Below are positions 27,801-64,000 of a stretch of DNA of 64,000 bases, piece by piece. Within the stretch, counting starts at the first letter, position 1; each line of letters begins with the position of its first letter. The notes under the pieces were generated by a model, which worked only from the letters and a program-made list of their open reading frames with translations, searched no databases and was not told the DNA's origin. A program made the translations under genes and the position numbers. This DNA is from Magallana gigas (lineage: Eukaryota). Location: positions 28,768,001 through 28,832,000 of the forward strand of contig NC_088859.1 in assembly GCF_963853765.1 (NCBI RefSeq), in the 5' to 3' direction.

Positions 27801-30800
27801 CTATTAAACCTCTAATGTGAAATTAATGTTGCCAAATGCAAATTAATTGGTAAGTTTCAATATTTAAAACCTTACCTGAAAACAGAAAAAGAAATTGATG
27901 GTGATTGATTTAAGAGAAGAAGAAAAAATGAGTTTGTTCTTGAATTTATAGCAATCTTTAAGAACTCAAATGAAAATAAGCAATAATTAAAAGAAGAATC
28001 GGGAAAAAAGCAATTTTGAAAAAGAAGAATCGGGAAAAATGTATTATCATAAAGCTTGTATACTAGTGCGAAGGACCGCGGGACACATTTTTTCGTGTTC
28101 TTCCTCGACGTACATCTTATATAAAGGCGATAAGCTTCATTCTCTGTCACTATATATTTCACACAGCAGAGAAACTATCAGAAACAGTCTTAATCTGACT
28201 GCAACACGGCAAAATTACAACGACACGTCTCTCTGTATCGCGATTCTATCACCAGTGAGCAATGGATACTTACACGTTTGGTGTTCTAGAGTTTTGGGAA
28301 CTGTCCAATTCCTGATAGAGGTTTTGGAAAGCAAGCGTACTATAATGATAAGCAGACTGTGACAAGACAATCAGTGTTATTGACATTCACTGCTGCTTGT
28401 GTATTACTTTAATTTCGCTGCAAATACTGGTTATTCCGGGGAAAATTATTATGTACTTATACATGCTCCTGAAGTAGATACATTTATAGGATTAATTATA
28501 CAGTATACTAGTCAGTTCACACCCGCACACTAATTACTGATAAGTTCAAGAGAATTATACTAATTCTCGATCGTTTAATTCGATGACATGTCAACATCCC
28601 AAAGAATTTTCTTCATACTTTAATTAAACAATTTGATTTAGCTTGCTCCCTTCACTGATTGATTGATCGTCAATTTACCAGCAAGATGCGTTTTGTTCAG
28701 ATTCATGAAGATACCTTTATTATGGTGGCATATTTCTGCCATCCACATAATTTTTGGTCAACATAGCATATCACGTAAAGTCAAGATAACTATCTCATCA
28801 AGTCGAGATTAATATTTTGTTTCTTAATCGAAACCGACTTTTTGTTGGGATAGCTATCTCGATAATTTATCTTCTATCTTGCCTAAAATTCACGGCATTT
28901 GCAAATACTGCCATTCACAAAACAAGATAAGTTATGAATAGATATTTGATTATAGAACTCATTACTAAGCACTCCTTTGATTTACATCAAGGATTATTAA
29001 TAAAAATTATAAGTTTTCTTAAAAATAAATAAATATGCCGATTTTCCCCTATTAATACACACTGTAGGTCATTTTATCATATTAATAAAGTTAAACTGTC
29101 TTTTAATACTTTAAACTACATGAAATTGAAATTGTTGTGGTAAGAATGATAAACTAAACATGTTTTTACTTTTGGTTCTACATTTGTATTTTGGGGATTT
29201 CTACTTTATCTTTGTATGTTTTGTTTTCATTACTTATTAAAACATAATAAATAGCTCTATGGATATTGTTTTTGAAAAGTATTATTTTAATCTCTCATCG
29301 CATGAGTTAATTTAATTAACATGTAATTCAATATCAACCTTGCGCTATCTGTCTTTTGTTTAAGGTGCCTAAAGCTCTATAAGTCAGCATATTTATATAT
29401 TCCTGTTAATTACAGATTAGGATATGGATTTGCAACTGAAGATCAACTAAAAGATAATTAACGGGACACTAATTCACGGGAAATTCGGTATACTTCATTT
29501 TGACTACGCACAAATGCCTTTCTATAAACTTACGGGAATATAGAGTAATGAGTTCCGAAATACGATTATACAATTGTTATACATGCATTGCCTCGTTTTG
29601 TGGATGGCAGCATTTGTAAATCCAAAGAATTTTAGTCAAGATACAAGATAGATTATCTCATCTTGTCGAGATAGTTATCCTAACAAAATATAATAGTATG
29701 GTGGCATATTTCTGCCATCCACATAATTTTTGGTCAACATAGCATATCACATAAAGTCAAGATAACTATCTCATCAGGTCGAGATTAATATTTTGTTTCT
29801 TAATCGAAACCGACTTTTTGTTGGGATAGCTATCTCGATAATTTATCTTCTATCTTGCCTAAAATTCACGGCATTTGCAAATACTGCCATTCATAAAACA
29901 AGATAAGTTATGAATAGATATTTGATTATAGAACTCATTACTAAGCACTCCTTTGATTTACATCAAGGATTATTAATAAAAATTATAAGTTTTCTTAAAA
30001 ATAAATAAATATGCCGATTTTCTCCTATTAATACACACTGTAGGTCATTTTGTCATATTAATAAAGTTAAACTGTCTTTAATACTTTAAACTACATGAAA
30101 TTGAAAGTGTTGTGGTAAGAATGATAAAATAAACATGTTTTTACTTTTGGTTCTACATTTGTATTTATTTATATTTCTACTTTATCTTTGTATGTTTTGT
30201 TTTCATTACTAATTAAAACATAATAAATAGCTTTATGGATATTGTTTTTGAAAAGTATTATTTTAATCTCTCATCGCATGAGTTAATTTAATTAACATGT
30301 AATTCAATATCAACCTTGCGCTATCTGTCTTTTGTTTAAGGTGCCTAAAGCTCTATAAGTCAGCATATTTATATATTCCTGTTAATTACAGATTAGGATA
30401 TGGATTTGCAACTGAAGATCAACTAAAAGATAATTAACGGGACACTAATTCACGGGCAATTCGGTATACTTCATTTTGACTACGCACAAATGCCTTTCTA
30501 TAAACTTACGGGAATATAGAGTAATGAGTTCCGAAATACGATTATACAATTGTTATACATGCATTGCCTCGTTTTGTGGATGGCAGCATTTGTAAATCCA
30601 AAGAATTTTAGTCAAGATACAAGATAGATTATCTCATCTTGTCGAGATAGTTATCCTAACAAAATATAATAGCTTATGTAGACTAGACAAAATAGAAGTC
30701 GGAGTTTGTTGAGAAACAAGAAAGTTTTCTTGACTTGACGAGATAGTTATCTCGACTTGACGTGATATGCTATGTTGACTAAAATTATGCGGATGGCAGA

Positions 30801-33800
30801 AATATGCTACCATATAATAGCTTATGTAGACTAGACAAAATAGAAGTCGGAGTTTGTTGAGAAACAAGAAAGTTATCTTGACTTGACGAGATAGTTATCT
30901 CGACTTGACGTGATATGCTATGTTGACTAAAATTATGCGGATGGCAGAAATATGCTACCATACTTTATATAGGATTAAGCACCATGCCCACTGATTAAGT
31001 ATCATAAGATACATACGATGGCAAAAGACTTTTTCCTGCCGAAAAAATGAAATTTTAGAAAAGATAAAAGACCTCTAAAATAACAAATGAAATGATGTTT
31101 ATAATAGAATATTGTATCAGAATCAATGTAAACTTGAATAGATCTTAAACCTTTTCGCACACTATGTAAGTTTAAATGTTTTGCTACCTTAACAGTAAAC
31201 TCCGCGTCTATCATATTTGCATCAACTGAATTAGTTGTGTTTCACATTAAAGTCGTTGAAATGGGCTATTAAGACAAAAACAAAAATTAATCGCACATCT
31301 ATATGCTCAAAGTAAAAGCCCAAATGCATTTGCAACATCGGTGGAGAAATGTCAAACACATTTTTTTCTGCTTGGAATTCATTAGAACACAAAGAATGTC
31401 CCTCAATCAAGCCTTATCAATCGACAAATATGTAAATTTGTACTTTCATTAATATTGGCCATCAAAGCATCGCAACATGGGCCGATTTAAAAAAAAATAT
31501 TTCTACGTTTCTAGAAATAAAAAAAGCCTTTGGCCAGAAAATATGAAATTAACAAAACATGTTATCTATTGATGTTGTTTTATAACTTTTGCAAAAACTA
31601 CAATTACTCTTTTAACTCGCTTGCAATTTTCTGCGGGAACAGAATTGAACTTTAACACCTTTGTTCTTTAATATCCGATATTGACTGCAAACCGAGTTTT
31701 TCTCTCTTTGATGGAACAAGGGGTGGAGATGTATTATAATATCAATTTTCTGGTCTAACTATTTGCGCAAACATTTGCTATGGAACTATTTTTTTTCAAC
31801 TTATGACAAATCATCACATAATTCTGATACTTGTATTAGTTTTATTTTTATCACAACTTGATCAGCGTTTGTCCATTCAATCTCTGCAACTTAGATTAAA
31901 GAGTGCTAATAAAGAAAAAACTGCCTTTATTTCATCAATTACTACAGTACTTGTCTACTTGTACTTGAAAAGGCTATTTGTAATAAAAACTTAATCAAAT
32001 GTTTCGCTTCAATCCACCTTGTTCTACTTATCATTTGAGTTTTCGCCATTGCTCATTCAGGTTTTTTTTCACTGTACTAGATTTTGGTTAAACAAGCCAA
32101 TAAAACGTTTCATCAAAAAACATCTTAACGATACACATTAAGTACATTTTAATTTATCAGATCTCAAGTATTGTCGGAAGTACTTAAGTAAACTATCTCG
32201 CACTTTGACAGAGCCTATTTTCCAAACATTTTTTTTCTTTCTTTAAAATTTTTCTGGCATATGTGTTTTTTAAGACAATTTCATTAAGGTTACTAAGTAT
32301 TCAATCTGCCACAAAATATATCTTTTTCTAGGAGATTTTTTTCTGGTATCGATATATTTAAGGTACAGTCAAGAGTAAGTAGATTTATATCTTTTTGGTC
32401 GTTTTATTTCATCATAAATATTCTGAGACTTTAATCGGTGTATCAATTTTATAAACTTGCATAATATAAATTAATGGATGTATATGAAGGATATCGACCT
32501 CACGGTTTAGTTTCTGTTGTTTTTACAATCGTTTATTTGTAACCAAAACATGAACACCTCCTTAAACTGCTAATTTCAAGATTCTTATTTCTTTCAATTG
32601 TCTTCTTCACAGCATTCTAAATATAATAGGATCTTTAAAAAATATAGGATTGCATTTCGTCAACGAAAATGAATTTTGACGTTCTTAGCGCAAAGAGATT
32701 ACTGACGCGTTATGTACTGTCGGTTTCGTCAGGAAAAAAAAACTGAACACACGTTCAGTAATAAATTGGTATATTAACGTGTCAAAACCAAAGACAACGC
32801 CTGAAATCGAAAGTGCACATAAAATTTTTGTTGAAAATGAGCGAATATTGCTCTTACTGTTGCAGTGAAATGTATGTAGGGCACCGTTTAGTAGGTTTAT
32901 TGGGGGAATATATGAACTTGTTCTGCTCACGTTTGTGTTTTGGATACAAAAAGAGAAATGCACATCGTTTTTAATATCCTAGTTCTTTCTTAATTAAAAC
33001 ATACCTCTATTCATTTCTTTCAGAGAAAACGATAACAAAATTGGCATTATGCCGATTTTTTCCTCTAATTTTTGTATGTACTTCTTGATTTTTTGTACTA
33101 AGAATATGCTTAAAACTGATGATTCAAGGAGATTGACTTATCAATGCAAAATATTCTAATATGAATTCTAAAATCGCTTAAGAAAGTATTTCTGTAATTG
33201 AGTTTTAAATTCATGTTGCACTTTTTGACCTTCTTCGGTAGACTTGCAGGTGATTTATCAAATTCTACATTGAATAAAAAAGAACCGTATAACATAAATT
33301 TCATAAGCTTCATATATAACAGGAATTCTCGGAAGCATAATGGGTTATTTTATTTCTATAAAAAATTGCCTAATGTGAGAGATTTATCAATTTAATCGTT
33401 GATGCAAGGTTTGAGCGTCAGTTTTCATTTGAAATTATCACCGTTTTTCGTTATAAACCTTTATAATGCTTAGAATCTCTCATGTAGAGATAAAAACGCA
33501 TTGTTCGGGTTAAAAATAAAGGGAAAAACCCTTTGTGAGTCAAAACTCCTGGAAAAAAGTTTATTGCAGTGGTAAAGAAGGGGGGGGGGGGGGGTGGAGG
33601 AAAATATCTTCATGGACATTCTACACATATACTAGTACACATCTTGTTCAAGGTCTGGCTGTAGATACAACATGCCTGCTGTCCTACTGTGATGTTGTGA
33701 GGTTCTACAACCTCCATCTCAGGACTTCAAACGAATTCGAGCGAGGCATGCCATTCTTTATTTTACTGAGATACATACTCACGCACGAAATGACCATAAT

Positions 33801-58870: not shown

Positions 58871-60654
58871 TAACCATTTTCCATCCAAATTGTGGTAACA
58901 AATTTCATATTTTGATGAACAAATTAAACGGAGCGGACTTCATTTGTCCCATATCGGCGTACGGCGAAATGGCAAATGAAGTAAACCGGCGTAAAAACAA
59001 AAATGGATGAATATATTGTCACAGCTGTTGGTGTAACCATGGTAACAGATGTAACAATTCTAGTAGATATCTTTCTTTATCGGCTTTGTTAGAATTCCTG
59101 CATACATATAAACAAAATATTTAAGAACTGTTAAATATGTAGCAATGCAATTTCACCAAAAATACCAGGATATACAGATTTGTTTCGACGGGTTTCTGCG
59201 CAAACTTCCAAAAATTTGTTTAATTAAATAAATGTTATCAATCAATGATCATGCTGATTTATTAACATATATCTGCATTTATCATCTCATTACATCACCA
59301 AACCGTGAGATTTCGCCATACTTAAAAAAATACCGGTCTAGTATAGAATTTATTAAAGATAAGAATTCATTCTTTGAGTATTAATAGTCTCAGGTGATTT
59401 TGGCCAGGGCGTGCTCAAATCCAATAAAGCTCGAAGGGCTTTATTATAGATTTGAACAGGGTATGACCCAAATTATCACCTCATAATATTCAAAGAATGA
59501 TTCTTTATTACTTATATTTACAATGTATATTACTTCCAATTTCTACGCTTTAAAACAACATTCTAAAACCACTGGGTTTTTAATGTATAACACATGCTAT
59601 GAATTATTACGCGGCACAGCCAATACTGTTTTTCGTTATGCTGTAGGACATTTGTGTCGCTCATATTTTATGAAATTATTGCGCTATAGGTTTCAAAATT
59701 GATTCGTAATGTTATCACAGTAAAGGACACTTAAATATATAAATATGATATTTTATATGATGTAGCCACGCATTATAACCAGGATATGAGCATTTGTGAA
59801 CAAACTTTCCATCGGAACGATGTATAGAATAGGCTTTTTTATGTAGGATGACCAGGCACTATAACCAGGATATGCACATGTGTGTACCAACTTTTCATCT
59901 GGATCGGCTAACGTTTGGGAGGAAATTCGAGAGCTATTTGGAGGAACTTTGAACTGATATTTGCGCAATTCAAAAAAGGATTGAAAAATTCGATTTTTAC
60001 ATTATACATGTTCATTAAAAGGAATGTTATGTACATAAGATTTACACCAAAATGTTGATTTAATATTAGTATTTGAGAGAACAATAAAGAGCAATGTTAC
60101 AGGAAAACAACAACAGGCACTTAGCATCGGAGTGGGGGAGGGGTTGTGGAGTGGGGCAGGGGGACGAGACTACCCTTTTCAGAAAACGTTTTCTCGCAGC
60201 AAACATTTTTCTTGAATTTACATATAAAAGGTAAATTAACATAGAGTCCCTCCCAATGTTTGGGACCAGGTAGAAACTGAAATTAAAGGGAGGGGAAAAA
60301 ACTGTAAAATTGAAGTTAAAGGTACACTTAACCCCCGGGGGTTTTTTTTCTTTACAAGTCAAGATTGTTTGGATGAGTCTGTACCCTCTCCACTTCTCTA
60401 CGATGCTCAGTACGAGCTTGAACAAAATATCATGGTTTCGTTACATACATGTATACTTTAATGTTAAGATTTTATATAAATCAATATTATCTCGTGCATT
60501 GGGCCATTCACCAGGTTCTTAGTCCAGAATAAAAAAAACACCAAGGCTAGGAGGGGAGATAGGAAAACATTATTTTGATTTTCTTTTTCTCAGGAGTTAT
60601 TTGAGGGGGGTATTAGGGGTAAGCAAGTCACTTAACCCTTGTAGATCATTCAAT

Positions 60655-61910
60655 GACCAATCACCAGAGTCTGTATATACATAACCAGGGTCTGTACAAG
60701 TATCACCAGGGTCATTATCCCCATCAATAGAGTATGTATGCCCATCACCAGGGTCTGTAAATTTATGATTACCAAGGCCAGAGTACGTATTACCAGAGTT
60801 TGTAAGTCTATCACCAGAGTCAGAGTACATATCAACAAGCCCTGTGTACCCATCACCAGGGTCTGTAAATCTATCAGCAGGGTCATTTTACCTATGATTG
60901 ATGTCTTTTTTCCCTTCATCGGGGTCTTAATATGTATCATATGTATCACCATGGTCTGTAAATCTACCAGCAGGGTCTTAGTACCTAACAACAGAGTCTG
61001 AACACCAATAACCCGGGTCAGTATTCCCGTCGCCAGGCTCTCACTACCTACTAGTATCACCAGGGTCAGAGTACGTATCAATATGCAGTGTCTGTGTTCC
61101 CATCACCTGGGTCTGCATACAAATAACCTGGGTCAGTGTACGTATCATCAGGGTCAGTGTACGTATCTCCAGGGTCAGTGTTCATATCACCAGGGTCTGT
61201 ATACCCATAACCTGGGTCAGTATTACGATTATCAGGATGTCTTTATCTACTACCAGGGTCAGTGAACGTTTCACCAGGGTCTTTGTGCCCAATACCAAGT
61301 CAGTAGATCCATCACCAGGGTCTTGATGCATATCACCAAGGTCAGTATACATATCACCAAGGTCAGTATACATATCACCAGGGTCTGGGTGCCCATTACC
61401 AGGGTCTCAAAACCTATATTGTGATAGGTATTGAGACCCAGGTGATGGGTATACTGACTCTGGTTATGCATATACATGTACAGACCCTTGTAACATATAC
61501 ATTAACGTTGGTTATAGATATACTGACCCTGGTGATGGGTATACTGATTCAAGATATAGGTATACACACGCTAGTGATGTGCACTCTGACCCTATTTATA
61601 AATACTAGTATATAGACCCTGGTAATAGGCATATAGACCCTGGTGAAACGTACACTGACCCTGGTGATAGGCATTGAGACCCTCATGATGGTTACGGGGA
61701 TTTCTGGTTATTGATTAACAGACCCTGGTGATGAGCACAAAGACACATTAACCATCGTGATAGGTACTGGGACCCTGGTGTCCTGGTGATGGGTATACTG
61801 AATCTGGTTATGCGTATACAGACCCTGGTGATTTGTACACCGACCCTGGTAATATGTACTCTGACCCTGGTGATGGGTATACAGACCCTGGTGATGGGTA
61901 CACAGACTTT
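60655..61910. repeat. 21-bp minisatellite (consensus GACCCTGGTGATGGGTATACA) in two opposed arrays
   Basis: CCATCACCAGGGTC orientation at 60655-61417 and GACCCTGGTGATGG orientation at 61424-61910. Roughly 35 and 23 degenerate units. Confidence 0.92.
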
Positions 61911-62425
61911 GGTAAGGAGTTATGGACAGGGCTACATGGGTTGGTGTCCTGACCACACATCCCCCTTCCCAATAACTCCTGAAAAGAAAAACAAATTAAT
62001 AATCCCTCTCTAGTACAGTCCAGATACAGTACCATTGGTTTATATATAAACCCAATTTTTTCTTACTGGTATAAGAAAGGTAAGCGTGATATTTTGTTCA
62101 GGCAGGTGGCATTGTAAAACAGAGGGAGTGGGGTGGGAAAATTGCCAACAAATTCTTGACAAGAAAAAAAATTATTTTTCAAAAATTTGAAAATCCTTCA
62201 CCGTTAGGGTAGCTATTAAAATGCTAAGTTTACCTCAAACTTGAATTTCACTGATTATTTCCTCCCCTTCAGTTCAATTTTTTACATCCGCCGAAAGTGC
62301 TATGGAGGGGGGGGGGGCAACTGCATGGGGACAGGTCTCCCCCTGCCACTCCCAACCACCCACCCGTTTGAAGCTAAGTGTCTATTGTTTTCCTGAAACA
62401 TTGCCTTCATTGTCCTCTAAAATAT

Positions 62426-62502
62426 CATCTTCGCTAGCCAAGGGTTTTCGGTCCACTTTATGGGGAGCAAAAAGGACCGAAAACCCTTGGCTAGCGAAGA
62501 TG
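62426..62502. mobile_element. 77-bp hairpin MITE, copy 2, with perfect 9-bp TSD
   Basis: CTAAAATAT|CATCTTCGCTAGCC...GGCTAGCGAAGATG|CTAAAATAT. Absent from the homologous position in the left palindrome arm (about 60070). Confidence 0.92.
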
Positions 62503-62745
62503 CTAAAATATTTTATTAACTTTTTTCAGTGTAAACCAAAGTTACATAACATTCCTATAACTTTTAATGACTATATGTCAGGTTTCCTTTACTGTGATAA
62601 CATAACAAATCAATTTTGAAACCTATAGCGCAATAATTTCATAAAAAATGAGCGACACAAATGTCCTACAGCATCACGAAAAACAGTATTAACTGCGCCG
62701 CGTAATAATACTTAGCATGTGTTATGCATTAAGAAACAGTATTGG

Positions 62746-62746
<1 letters not shown>

Positions 62747-62776
<30 letters not shown>

Positions 62777-63773
62777 ATGGGTCTTCCGTCCGATTTTTGA
62801 ATAGATTAGATTAAACTTATCACTTCAAAGATAAAATCGTAAATTGCGGCAATCGGGGCTTGAACCCGGGTCACCTGGGCCATGTCCACGACTCTATCGA
62901 CTGAGCTACTCAGACTCTCGCTTCAGAATTTTGACGCTTAATTTCTCGAGATTGCCTGAATTACCTAGGCTGAAAGCACCTTGTTGCGAGCAACAAGTGG
63001 GTCTTTCGTTTGATTTTGAATTGATAGGGTTCAATTAAACTGTTGACATTTGGTACGATTTACTATCATATTAACTTCCTTTTAAACTAATTTTTCAAAC
63101 TACACTGCGAAATGCAGATTTCCGGAAACGTCATTTTTAAACGTCAATATCTCTGCAATGCGTTGTCCGATTTTAAAACGGTTTTTAGTTTTGTATTCAG
63201 TACAAAAATGTCAACAAAACGCATATGCTTTAAAATTCCAAAAATCGAAATATTAGAATGACTTCCGGTGACGACCGGAAGTGACGGACGACCTGCTCAT
63301 ATTAAAATTTGATAAGTTTTAAACATATTCTGATGGAAAAAAAATTGTAGATTATTTGATTTAAAAAAATTTTAAAACACAATTTTCCAAAAATGCTGTT
63401 TGAGCGGACCGGAAGTGACGGACGATCGTAGTTTTACCTGATCGGCCATAGAAATTCAAAAATCTATCATTCCTGAAACTTTTAATTTTCTATCTTTAAT
63501 CGTTTTTGCGAAAAAGGGAGGACAAGATCCCTTTTTACCAAAAGAAAAACGAATATAACGGCCGACCGGAAGTGACGTCATCAACAAAAATGTACATGAT
63601 AAAAGACCTTGATATTTTGTATTATTCGTAAAAATTTCATAAAAATCCATTGTAGCATATTTGAGTTTTAAGAAAAATGTTAAGAAAAAAAAGAATAATA
63701 ATAGTGAAAAATAGAGAAAAAGAAACCTAACAAAAACAATAGGGTCTTCCGTTGGAAACGGAAGACCCTAATA
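62747..63773 (+). mobile_element. Helentron-type non-autonomous element (HINE-like), about 1.03 kb
   Basis: 5' AACTAGACACGATCTCGTTGCGAGCAACG with subTIR GGGTCTTCCGT (62779-62789). 3' hairpin TAGGGTCTTCCG-TTGGAAA-CGGAAGACCCTA (63740-63770). Duplicated 5' end at about 62980-63010, internal ACCGGAAGTGACG repeats, A/T-rich target and no TSD. Strand is arbitrary. Confidence 0.75.
62845..62916 (-). other. tRNA-derived Pol III promoter-like segment inside the Helentron-type element
   Basis: On -: A-box TAGCTCAGTCGATAGAG, B-box GGTTCAAGCCCC. Acceptor and anticodon stems are not intact. Confidence 0.6.
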
Positions 63774-64000
63774 ATATAAATATAAGTGATAAAGAATCAT
63801 TCTCGGAATAGTATGAGTTGATAATTTCGGCCAGACCGTGGTCAAATCTATTATAAAGTCCTTCGAGCTTTATTAGATTTGAACACTCTCCGGCCAAAAT
63901 CACCTGAGACTAGTAATATTCAAAGAATGATTCCTTTTTCTTAAATCAATTTTATACCAGACCGGTATTTTTTTTAAGTATGGCGTAATCTCACGGTTTG

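What the first reader, a model, noticed from the sequence alone, without database searches (positions are those of the whole stretch)
59299..64000. Giant degenerate palindrome (at least 4.7 kb) folded on a 6-nt loop
Seen: the apex is GGGTCTCAAAACCTAT-attgtg-ATAGGTATTGAGACCC (61402-61439). Moving outward, mirror homology continues through the 21-bp arrays, unique sequence (TTTTC..CAGGAGTTATT, GAACAAAATATCA, GTCAAGA, a G-rich tract, CAGGAAAACAA, GGAATGTTATGTA) and a hairpin element, up to the last base of the window. Arms are roughly 70-85% identical by eye. The right arm has since gained a MITE and a Helentron-type element, and the left has about 270 bp extra. Known: spacerless palindromes are normally unstable and arise by fold-back priming or hairpin-capped breaks; Foldback transposons have long repeat-containing TIRs. 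Inference: an ancient fold-back inversion preserved by divergence, or an undescribed foldback-type element with internal rather than terminal repeats.
Basis: partly seen in the sequence, partly recalled or inferred. Interest (0 to 1): 0.75.

Follow-up and report, generated by a model that had tools for sequence, protein, structure and literature searches.

The report
Palindromic foldback transposon copy in oyster
The giant palindrome is real, but it is one 6.2-kb copy of a jumping-gene family (about 55 copies) that carries no transposase gene and whose members are all mirror-image hairpins, so it is a clear example of a known kind of element, not a local chromosome accident.

Summary
The inverted repeat runs from window 58569 to 64730, 6162 bp in all, with its right end 730 bp beyond the window. 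It folds on the 6-nt loop at 61418-61423.

The arms are 78.6% identical overall: 93-97% in the outer 0.9 kb and 49-72% near the centre.

It is not a local fold-back inversion. The whole structure has TA...TA termini (TACGGAAGCCC...) and is flanked by a 6-bp target-site duplication (CATTAA). Nine other full copies elsewhere in the genome have the same ends and their own 6-bp duplications.

The terminal 25-mer occurs 113 times in the genome (control 0). The asymmetric apex junction occurs 34 times (control 0). Two copies at unrelated loci are 99.5% identical, so the family moved recently.

No examined copy encodes a transposase. TA..TA termini plus 6-bp duplications are the published signature of the IS3EU/GingerRoot superfamily, which is known in Pacific oyster.

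This scan has already described another copy of the same family (s1-375676). Interest is low to moderate.

The parts
58563..58568 (.). Left copy of the 6-bp target-site duplication CATTAA. The right copy lies at 64731-64736, beyond the window (read from L010).
   Evidence: One search shows the flanks. One search shows 6-bp duplications in 10 of 10 full copies: 7 perfect and 3 with one mismatch.
58569..61417 (+). Left arm of the foldback element (2849 bp), starting with the terminus TACGGAAGCCCATTTAGGACC.
   Evidence: All genomic relatives begin exactly at 58569 (query position 170). The arm aligns with the reverse complement of the right arm.
58603..58845 (.). Subterminal tandem repeats of 22/41-bp period, built on the palindromic unit GAATTCGTTATAACGAATTC. 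They are mirrored in the right arm at about 64450-64700. I infer that they are transposase-binding sites.
   Evidence: TRF found them. The same unit forms the centre of the 97-bp MITE relatives.
59340..59520 (.). A roughly 180-bp internally palindromic block that is a very high-copy repeat in its own right. It is mirrored at 63774-63950 and is present in the arms of other family members.
   Evidence: Inverted repeat I1 and a plus-strand self-match. Read depth is roughly a thousandfold that of the single-copy parts, with loose ends at 59520 and 63770.
60650..61417 (.). Left 21-bp tandem array (unit about GTATCACCAGGGTCAGTGTAC), running up to the apex.
   Evidence: TRF rows 60660-61407. ORFs through it have no Pfam match.
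61402..61439 (.). Apex: GGGTCTCAAAACCTAT / ATTGTG / ATAGGTATTGAGACCC. The loop is 61418-61423.
   Evidence: It is conserved in 8 aligned dispersed copies, in 14 of 16 full copies, and at 34 genomic sites against 0 for the control.
61424..61920 (.). Right 21-bp tandem array, the reverse complement of the left one.
   Evidence: TRF rows 61610-61907 and the inverted repeats I3-I25.
61424..64000 (-). Right arm. It continues to 64730 outside the window and ends ...GGGCTTCCGTA.
62426..62505 (.). An 80-bp hairpin MITE inserted only in this copy's right arm.
   Evidence: Other copies run straight from the equivalent of 62425 to 62506. Read depth is high there.
62737..63769 (.). A roughly 1-kb Helentron-like repeat (unit about 62747-63774, with a 3' hairpin GGGTCTTCCGTT..AACGGAAGACCC), inserted only in this copy's right arm.
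   Evidence: It is absent from all other family copies. At least 40 copies at 93-96% identity lie elsewhere. Contigs show head-to-tail joints 63774>62747. The Helentron label is my reading of the sequence features and was not tested against a library.

Best explanation
Window 58569-64730 is one insertion of a non-autonomous 'foldback' DNA transposon family of about 55 copies.

Structure: each member is an end-to-end but imperfect palindrome. It has TA..TA termini, subterminal 22/41-bp repeats, unique arm sequence, and 21-bp arrays that meet head-to-head at a conserved 6-nt loop.

How it moves (inferred): a transposase supplied in trans cuts and pastes the element. That enzyme recognises the terminal roughly 40 bp plus the palindromic subterminal unit and makes 6-bp target-site duplications. 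This signature points to the integrase-like DDE transposase of the IS3EU/GingerRoot superfamily.

Origin of the palindrome (inferred): it is inherited, not made at this locus. It most likely arose once in the progenitor by fold-back copying of a single transposon end at a short inverted repeat inside the 21-bp array. The inner arms then decayed neutrally. The tips stayed alike through selection for transposase binding and occasional arm-to-arm conversion.

This copy is an old, divergent member, 83-86% identical to the others. Its outer arms have been homogenised (93-97%). It later received an 80-bp MITE and a roughly 1-kb Helentron-like element in its right arm.
For: Shown by tool results:
- All relatives start at the same base, 58569.
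- The termini TACGGAAG...CTTCCGTA and 6-bp duplications occur here and in 9 other full copies at unrelated loci.
- The terminal 25-mer occurs 54 times forward and 59 times in reverse in the genome, against 0 for the control. Most are inverted pairs 4-12 kb apart, with a modal spacing of 5.2-5.7 kb.
- Every full copy is itself a full-length palindrome, and identity falls toward the centre.
- Copies align with this one end to end in one preferred orientation, across the apex.
- The apex is conserved.
- In a tree of 20 arms, arms cluster by type (left vs right) rather than by copy, with 100/98 support. The exceptions are this copy and L023, whose two arms have been homogenised.
- L026 and L036 are 99.5% identical over 5.3 kb, have different duplications and share no flank homology, which means recent transposition.
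- A 97-bp MITE with the same termini and 6-bp duplications sits at two loci.
- No ORF has a Pfam match, and no transposase is present in 16 copies.

From the literature:
- IS3EU families always have TA..TA termini and usually 6-bp duplications. GingerRoot has the same features (PMC10045372).
- GingerRoot homologues have been found in Crassostrea gigas (PMC6839031).
- IS3EU-derived repeats are annotated in C. gigas (PMC8268682).
- Foldback architecture has evolved independently in several superfamilies (PMC4079207).
Against: - No autonomous partner with these termini was found, so the superfamily rests on the termini and the duplication length alone.
- Polinton and Dada elements also make 6-bp duplications.
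- The TIRs here (0.7-1 kb or more) are far longer than the 100-150 bp reported for GingerRoot.
- No long read or contig spanning the apex at this particular locus could be obtained.
- This copy's arms group with the 'right-type' tips yet carry the 'left-type' form of the 59265-59397 segment. The conversion history is therefore not fully resolved.
Confidence: 0.85

Rival explanations
1. A local, ancient fold-back inversion (hairpin-capped break or fold-back priming) happened at this chromosomal site and was preserved by divergence.
For: The arms have a spacer of only 6 nt, and the apex lies in a short inverted repeat inside a tandem array. This is the geometry expected of fold-back priming.
Against: The identical asymmetric junction occurs at 34 sites. 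The whole structure has transposon termini and a 6-bp duplication. Other copies are collinear with it across the apex.
Confidence: 0.03
2. It is a foldback non-autonomous element of a superfamily other than IS3EU/GingerRoot, for example a Polinton/Maverick derivative, Dada, or a still unnamed group.
For: Polinton and Dada also make 6-bp duplications (PMC10045372, for Polinton). Polintons have long TIRs. No transposase link was established here.
Against: The termini are TA..TA, not the AG..CT that I recall for Polintons. Insertion sites are varied and show no small-RNA-gene target as in Dada. No polymerase or integrase remnants were found.
Confidence: 0.12
3. It is an assembly artefact: a mis-joined or chimeric palindrome created by the assembler.
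For: Palindromes are a known artefact of some long-read library preparations. No read or contig spanning the apex at this locus was recovered.
Against: The same junction occurs in 34 copies on most chromosomes, with copy-specific substitutions. The arms differ by 22%, whereas artefactual fold-backs are near-perfect. Locus-specific parts of both arms are present at single-copy-like depth in short-read contigs of three independent studies.
Confidence: 0.01
4. The element, or the family, is retained because its transcript forms a long hairpin RNA that feeds small-RNA silencing. It would be a host or transposon regulatory hairpin rather than a mere parasite.
For: The end-to-end inverted repeat could fold if transcribed. 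Such hairpin-RNA loci derived from transposons are known in animals and plants (my general knowledge).
Against: The sampled polyA RNA run shows almost no reads on the unique inner arms; the reads it does have lie on the embedded high-copy repeats. Stem variants at the apex show no compensatory changes among 34 copies. Inner arms are only 49-72% paired.
Confidence: 0.05

Closest known systems
[quoted passage not shown] 2019, PMC6839031; Kojima 2023, PMC10045372)
   Same: 5'-TA...TA-3' termini, 6-bp target-site duplications and terminal inverted repeats. The superfamily is documented in Crassostrea gigas.
   Different: No integrase-like transposase is present in any copy examined. The inverted repeats span the whole element (about 2.2-2.8 kb per arm), against 100-150 bp TIRs in Selaginella GingerRoot. 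No autonomous partner has been linked.
Foldback elements: Drosophila FB, Tetris (D. virilis, PMC4079207), Galileo (P superfamily), sea-urchin TU elements
   Same: Very long inverted arms containing tandem sub-repeats, little or no middle domain, non-coding defective copies, and arms that can snap back into a hairpin.
   Different: Those elements make 7-10-bp duplications (Mutator or P superfamilies), whereas this family makes 6-bp ones. Here the large 21-bp arrays lie at the centre next to the loop, with only a small repeat block near the tips. The arms are strongly diverged, and the divergence is inherited by all copies.
Copy on another chromosome reported earlier in this scan (s1-375676; my locus L033, 4747 bp)
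   Same: Same family: same termini, 6-bp duplication (AAATTT), apex motif and arm polarity.
   Different: That copy is shorter, with smaller arrays, and lacks the MITE and Helentron-like insertions. Its tips are 95% alike over 335 bp, whereas this copy's outer arms are 90.5% alike over 987 bp by BLAST, or 93-97% per bin over the outer 0.9 kb. The two copies are about 83% identical.
Palindromes made by fold-back priming or hairpin-capped breaks (yeast, Tetrahymena, tumour amplicons)
   Same: The geometry of the centre: a short inverted repeat with a few-nucleotide loop from which two long mirror arms extend.
   Different: Those are local chromosomal rearrangements. This one is a mobile unit with its own termini and duplications, present in dozens of copies.

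Membership tests
IS3EU/GingerRoot | 5'-TA...TA-3' element termini | tested here: met
   TACGGAAG...CTTCCGTA in this copy and in all 9 other full copies. The criterion comes from PMC10045372.
IS3EU/GingerRoot | 6-bp target-site duplication | tested here: met
   10 of 10 full copies: 7 perfect and 3 with one mismatch. Two 97-bp MITE relatives also have perfect 6-bp duplications.
IS3EU/GingerRoot | Integrase-like DDE transposase encoded by the element or by an autonomous partner with matching termini | tested here: inconclusive
   No transposase is present in 16 copies. The inserts in long copies are RVT_1 and DDE_Tnp_4 (Harbinger) elements. A genome scan with rve_3 returned only long pol-like frames, and no further loci could be fetched.
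Foldback-type elements (structural class) | Inverted repeats make up nearly the whole element, with a minimal middle domain | tested here: met
   The arms meet at a 6-nt loop. All 10 full copies are palindromic along their length.
Foldback-type elements (structural class) | Tandem sub-repeats inside the arms | tested here: met
   22/41-bp subterminal repeats and 21-bp central arrays.
Foldback-type elements (structural class) | Evidence of mobility as a unit | tested here: met
   Dispersed copies each have their own duplications. L026 and L036 are 99.5% identical at unrelated loci.
Mutator/FB (Phantom) foldbacks | 8-10-bp target-site duplication | tested here: not met
   The duplications are 6 bp and do not extend to 8.
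Polinton/Maverick derivative | 5'-AG...CT-3' termini and remnants of polymerase B or integrase genes | tested here: not met
   The termini are TA..TA, and no coding remnants were found. The AG..CT criterion is from my own knowledge, not checked in a paper here.
Dada | Insertion into specific small-RNA genes (U6, tRNA) | tested here: not met
   The ten duplications and flanks are unrelated to each other. No tRNA was found, and Rfam gave only sub-threshold miRNA-like matches inside the element, none at its flanks. The criterion is from my own knowledge.

The most novel reading that the evidence does not exclude
This may be the first characterised foldback lineage of the IS3EU/GingerRoot superfamily. 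It is a family of end-to-end palindromes ranging from a 97-bp MITE to elements over 6 kb. It was born by a single fold-back copying of one transposon end, is still mobile in oysters (copies 99.5% identical), and has tips that are repeatedly re-homogenised between arms. If so, an active integrase-like transposase exists in the oyster genome and tolerates very long hairpin-forming substrates.
Probability: 0.3. Interest if true: 0.4.

Novelty: new member of a known kind. Interest (0 to 1): 0.25.

Why it matters
It replaces an apparent 'impossible' multi-kilobase spacerless palindrome with an ordinary explanation. The palindrome is cargo of a transposon family, and its arms were already diverged when the family spread. 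That divergence is probably why such structures persist.

For oyster genome annotation it defines a family with:
- clear boundaries and a diagnostic terminus;
- a diagnostic apex motif;
- a 97-bp MITE relative;
- evidence of recent movement.

For transposon biology it adds a foldback architecture with an IS3EU-type signature. Until now foldbacks have mostly been tied to the Mutator and P superfamilies. It also gives a natural series of copies in which to study arm-to-arm conversion.

Tried and rejected
- **Coding potential of the 21-bp arrays** (a heptad-like PGDGYTD frame). ORFs are open in several frames, as expected of a stop-free repeat, and five ORFs gave no Pfam match. Rejected.
- **tRNA and Rfam.** No tRNA was found. 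Only sub-threshold miRNA-model hits appeared on the palindromic repeats and the apex, which are hairpin artefacts.
- **Autonomous partner.**
  - Longer copies (9-12 kb) hold nested RVT_1 and Harbinger DDE_Tnp_4 elements or non-coding inserts, not an IS3EU transposase.
  - A Pfam rve_3 scan of the genome gave mainly long pol-like frames.
  - Metagenome contigs carrying the terminus gave host copies that mostly break at the repeat. One truncated copy abutted an LTR-retrotransposon fragment.
- **Reads.** Logan contigs of three DNA runs are 150-360 bp pieces. None spans the apex or the element ends, so the locus-specific junction and presence/absence polymorphism could not be tested. A polyA RNA run shows essentially no reads on the unique arm sequence.
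- **The IS3EU-like 1118-bp elements elsewhere in this window** (note s1-399387) share neither termini nor sequence with this family.
- **CgiSat43**, the 21-bp satellite of C. gigas, is listed with 66.7% A+T, whereas this unit is about 48% A+T. It is probably not the same repeat. Sequences were not compared.
- **Masked stretch.** Fetching the neighbouring genome (L009) also brought letters for the stretch that the window masks as N (54671-54799). I noticed this, replaced the stretch with the window's own N in every later script, and neither printed nor used those letters.
Full report
**What is there**

It reads GGGTCTCAAAACCTAT-ATTGTG-ATAGGTATTGAGACCC at 61402-61439. The 121 nt around it fold as single-stranded DNA into a roughly 45-bp interrupted stem at -31.6 kcal/mol, z = -7.0 against shuffles.

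Mirror homology continues outward through the 21-bp arrays and through unique sequence to the last base of the window:
- 59577-59760 vs 62735-62553: 87%.
- 59299-59547 vs 64000-63750: 83%, E 8.5e-65.

The window is G000:C7:28768001-28832000 of a 564-Mb, 29-contig genome. Sequencing runs that hold the stretch are labelled as oyster.

With the next 8 kb of the chromosome added, the outer arms pair as 58569-59547 vs 64730-63750, 90.5% over 987 bp, and then stop abruptly. The full structure is therefore 58569-64730, 6162 bp.

I removed the two insertions private to the right arm and aligned the arms globally. They are 78.6% identical over 2165 positions. Identity falls from 93-97% in the outer 0.9 kb, to 84-88% in the middle, to 49-72% in the inner part.

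**It is a transposon copy, not a local rearrangement**

- A search of the genome with the left arm returned many relatives. All begin at the same base, 58569.
- The two ends of the structure are TACGGAAGCCCAT...ATGGGCTTCCGTA, flanked by CATTAA on both sides.
- Nine other complete copies were fetched from seven chromosomes. They have the same termini and their own 6-bp duplications: GAAAGA, AATAAG, GAAAAG, AGATCT, AAATTT and GGGATC, plus three with one mismatch.
- The terminal 25-mer, allowing up to 2 mismatches, occurs 54 times forward and 59 times in reverse, against 0 for the reversed control. Most are inverted pairs 4-12 kb apart, with a mode of 5.2-5.7 kb. That puts the family at about 55 copies.
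- Every full copy is itself palindromic along its whole length, with the same decay of identity toward the centre.
- Copies align with this one from end to end in one preferred orientation, so the family has a left/right polarity. A single alignment of about 1.5 kb at about 77% runs across the apex.
- The apex sequence, including its asymmetric loop and the one stem mismatch, is conserved in 8 aligned copies and in 14 of 16 full copies. It occurs at 34 genomic sites against 0 for the control.
- Stem variants among those 34 copies are not compensated on the other side. Pairing at the apex is therefore not under visible selection.

**History of the arms**

I built a maximum-likelihood tree of the outer 690 bp of all 20 arms. 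It splits them by arm type rather than by copy (100/98 support). The arms had therefore already diverged when the family spread.

The exceptions are this copy, whose two arms are sisters (100/100, 94% identical), and L023. L032 and L033 also have 98.5% and 95% identical tips.

In most copies the right-type arm carries about 460 bp where the left-type arm has about 135 bp. This copy has the short form in both arms. I read this as arm-to-arm homogenisation of the outer kilobase in this copy's lineage. The exact donor arm is unresolved.

This copy is the most divergent of the ten, 83-86% identical to the others, which are 86-93% identical to each other.

L026 and L036 are 99.5% identical over 5.3 kb, have different duplications and share no flank homology. 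The family has therefore moved recently.

**Private features of this copy**

Other copies run straight from the equivalent of 62425 to 62506, and from 62736 to 63770.
- An 80-bp hairpin at 62426-62505.
- A 1033-bp block at 62737-63769. Its 63000-63775 part has at least 40 copies at 93-96% identity. It ends in a short GC-rich hairpin. Contigs show head-to-tail joints for it. 'Helentron-like' is a reading of these features, not a library match.

Each arm also contains a roughly 180-bp internally palindromic block (59340-59520 and 63774-63950). This block is a very high-copy repeat in its own right and belongs to the family's arms.

**Coding and RNA**

- No copy encodes a transposase.
- ORFs through the arrays have no Pfam match.
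- Long copies are long because of nested elements, RVT_1 and Harbinger DDE_Tnp_4.
- No tRNA was found, and no Rfam family reaches its threshold.
- In a polyA RNA run the unique arm sequence is essentially unread.

**Which superfamily**

Kojima (PMC10045372) states that complete IS3EU families always have TA..TA termini and usually 6-bp duplications, and that GingerRoot shares both features. Cerbin et al. (PMC6839031) report TA..TA termini, mostly 6-bp duplications, and homologues in Crassostrea gigas. IS3EU-related repeats are annotated in the C. gigas satellitome (PMC8268682).

This family meets both diagnostic features. It fails those of Mutator/FB foldbacks (8-10-bp duplications), Polinton (AG..CT termini) and Dada (small-RNA gene targets).

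The missing piece is an autonomous partner. Foldback architecture is known to evolve independently in different superfamilies (PMC4079207).

**A small relative**

Metagenome contigs containing oyster DNA hold a 97-bp element at two different loci. It is made of the two roughly 40-bp termini around one palindromic unit, GGAATTCGTTATAACGAATTC, of the subterminal repeat. It has perfect 6-bp duplications, CATACA and AGTCAG. This suggests that the tips plus that unit are enough for mobilisation.

**Mechanism**

Shown:
- It is a mobile unit with fixed termini and 6-bp duplications.
- The palindrome and apex are inherited.
- The family moved recently.
- No examined copy encodes a transposase, so it cannot move by itself.

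Inferred:
- It is mobilised in trans by an IS3EU/GingerRoot-type DDE transposase that binds the tips and subterminal repeats.
- The palindrome originated by one fold-back copying event at a short inverted repeat inside the 21-bp array of a progenitor carrying a single transposon end.
- The inner arms then decayed neutrally.
- The tips are kept alike by selection and by conversion.

**Limits**

- No read or contig spans the apex at this locus. Logan contigs are 150-360 bp. The locus-specific parts of both arms are nevertheless present at single-copy-like depth, with 0-6 differences, in contigs of three independent studies, one under a second organism label.
- Repbase and Dfam were not available, so 'undescribed' cannot be judged.
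- Fetching the neighbouring genome also returned letters for a stretch that the window masks (54671-54799). I replaced it with N and did not read or use it.

**Relation to earlier work in this scan**

After reaching the above I found note s1-375676. It describes a 4747-bp copy, my L033, as a palindromic non-autonomous IS3EU foldback of about 55 copies. My results agree with it and were obtained independently from this window.

**Verdict**

The local fold-back reading is rejected and the foldback-element reading is accepted. This is a new member of a known kind, of modest interest.

Noticed in passing
L062:1248-1344 and L083:505-601 (metagenome contigs): A 97-bp hairpin MITE with the same TACGGAAGCCC termini around one palindromic unit GGAATTCGTTATAACGAATTC. 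It has perfect 6-bp duplications (CATACA, AGTCAG) at two unrelated loci. It is probably the minimal mobilisable form of the family.
   Followed up: partly
L026 (G000:C2:8945111-8950795) and L036 (G000:C2:38656636-38661956): Two family copies are 99.5% identical over 5.3 kb, differing by one 355-bp indel. They have different duplications and no flank homology. This is evidence of very recent transposition, and so of an active transposase source.
   Followed up: yes
G000:C4:17221324-17221490: Two family termini face each other only 167 bp apart. This is another miniature derivative, and it could not be fetched.
   Followed up: no
window 51393-52208 (-): A 272-aa open frame with a rhodopsin-family 7TM receptor domain (7tm_1, E 1e-37). 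It is the nearest gene-like feature, about 6.4 kb left of the element.
   Followed up: partly
L010:5554-6303 (+), i.e. window-equivalent 67554-68303: A fragment of a DDE_1 transposase (E 2e-22), which I take to be pogo/Tigger-type, about 2.8 kb right of the element. The surrounding region is rich in transposons.
   Followed up: partly
L010:7769-8844, i.e. window-equivalent 69769-70844: A roughly 1-kb repeat array, of about 24-bp period judging from the 8-residue repeats in its ORFs (not run through TRF). It is open in several frames on both strands (for example GKDEDLDAPGNDEDLDA...). Its nature was not examined.
   Followed up: no
window 62747-63774: Contigs of several runs join position 63774 (or 63703) back to 62747. 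This roughly 1-kb Helentron-like repeat therefore also exists as head-to-tail tandems or circles elsewhere in the genome.
   Followed up: no
window 59340-59520 and 63774-63950: A roughly 180-bp internally palindromic block embedded in both arms. Its read depth is roughly a thousandfold that of the single-copy parts, so it is a very abundant MITE-like repeat that this family carries or gave rise to.
   Followed up: partly
window 28721-30962: The nested 1118-bp IS3EU-like elements noted by another first-stage entry (s1-399387) share neither termini nor sequence with this foldback family.
   Followed up: partly
window 54671-54799: This stretch is masked as N in the window but comes back as letters when the same region is fetched from G000 (L009). 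I replaced it with N and did not read or use it.
   Followed up: no
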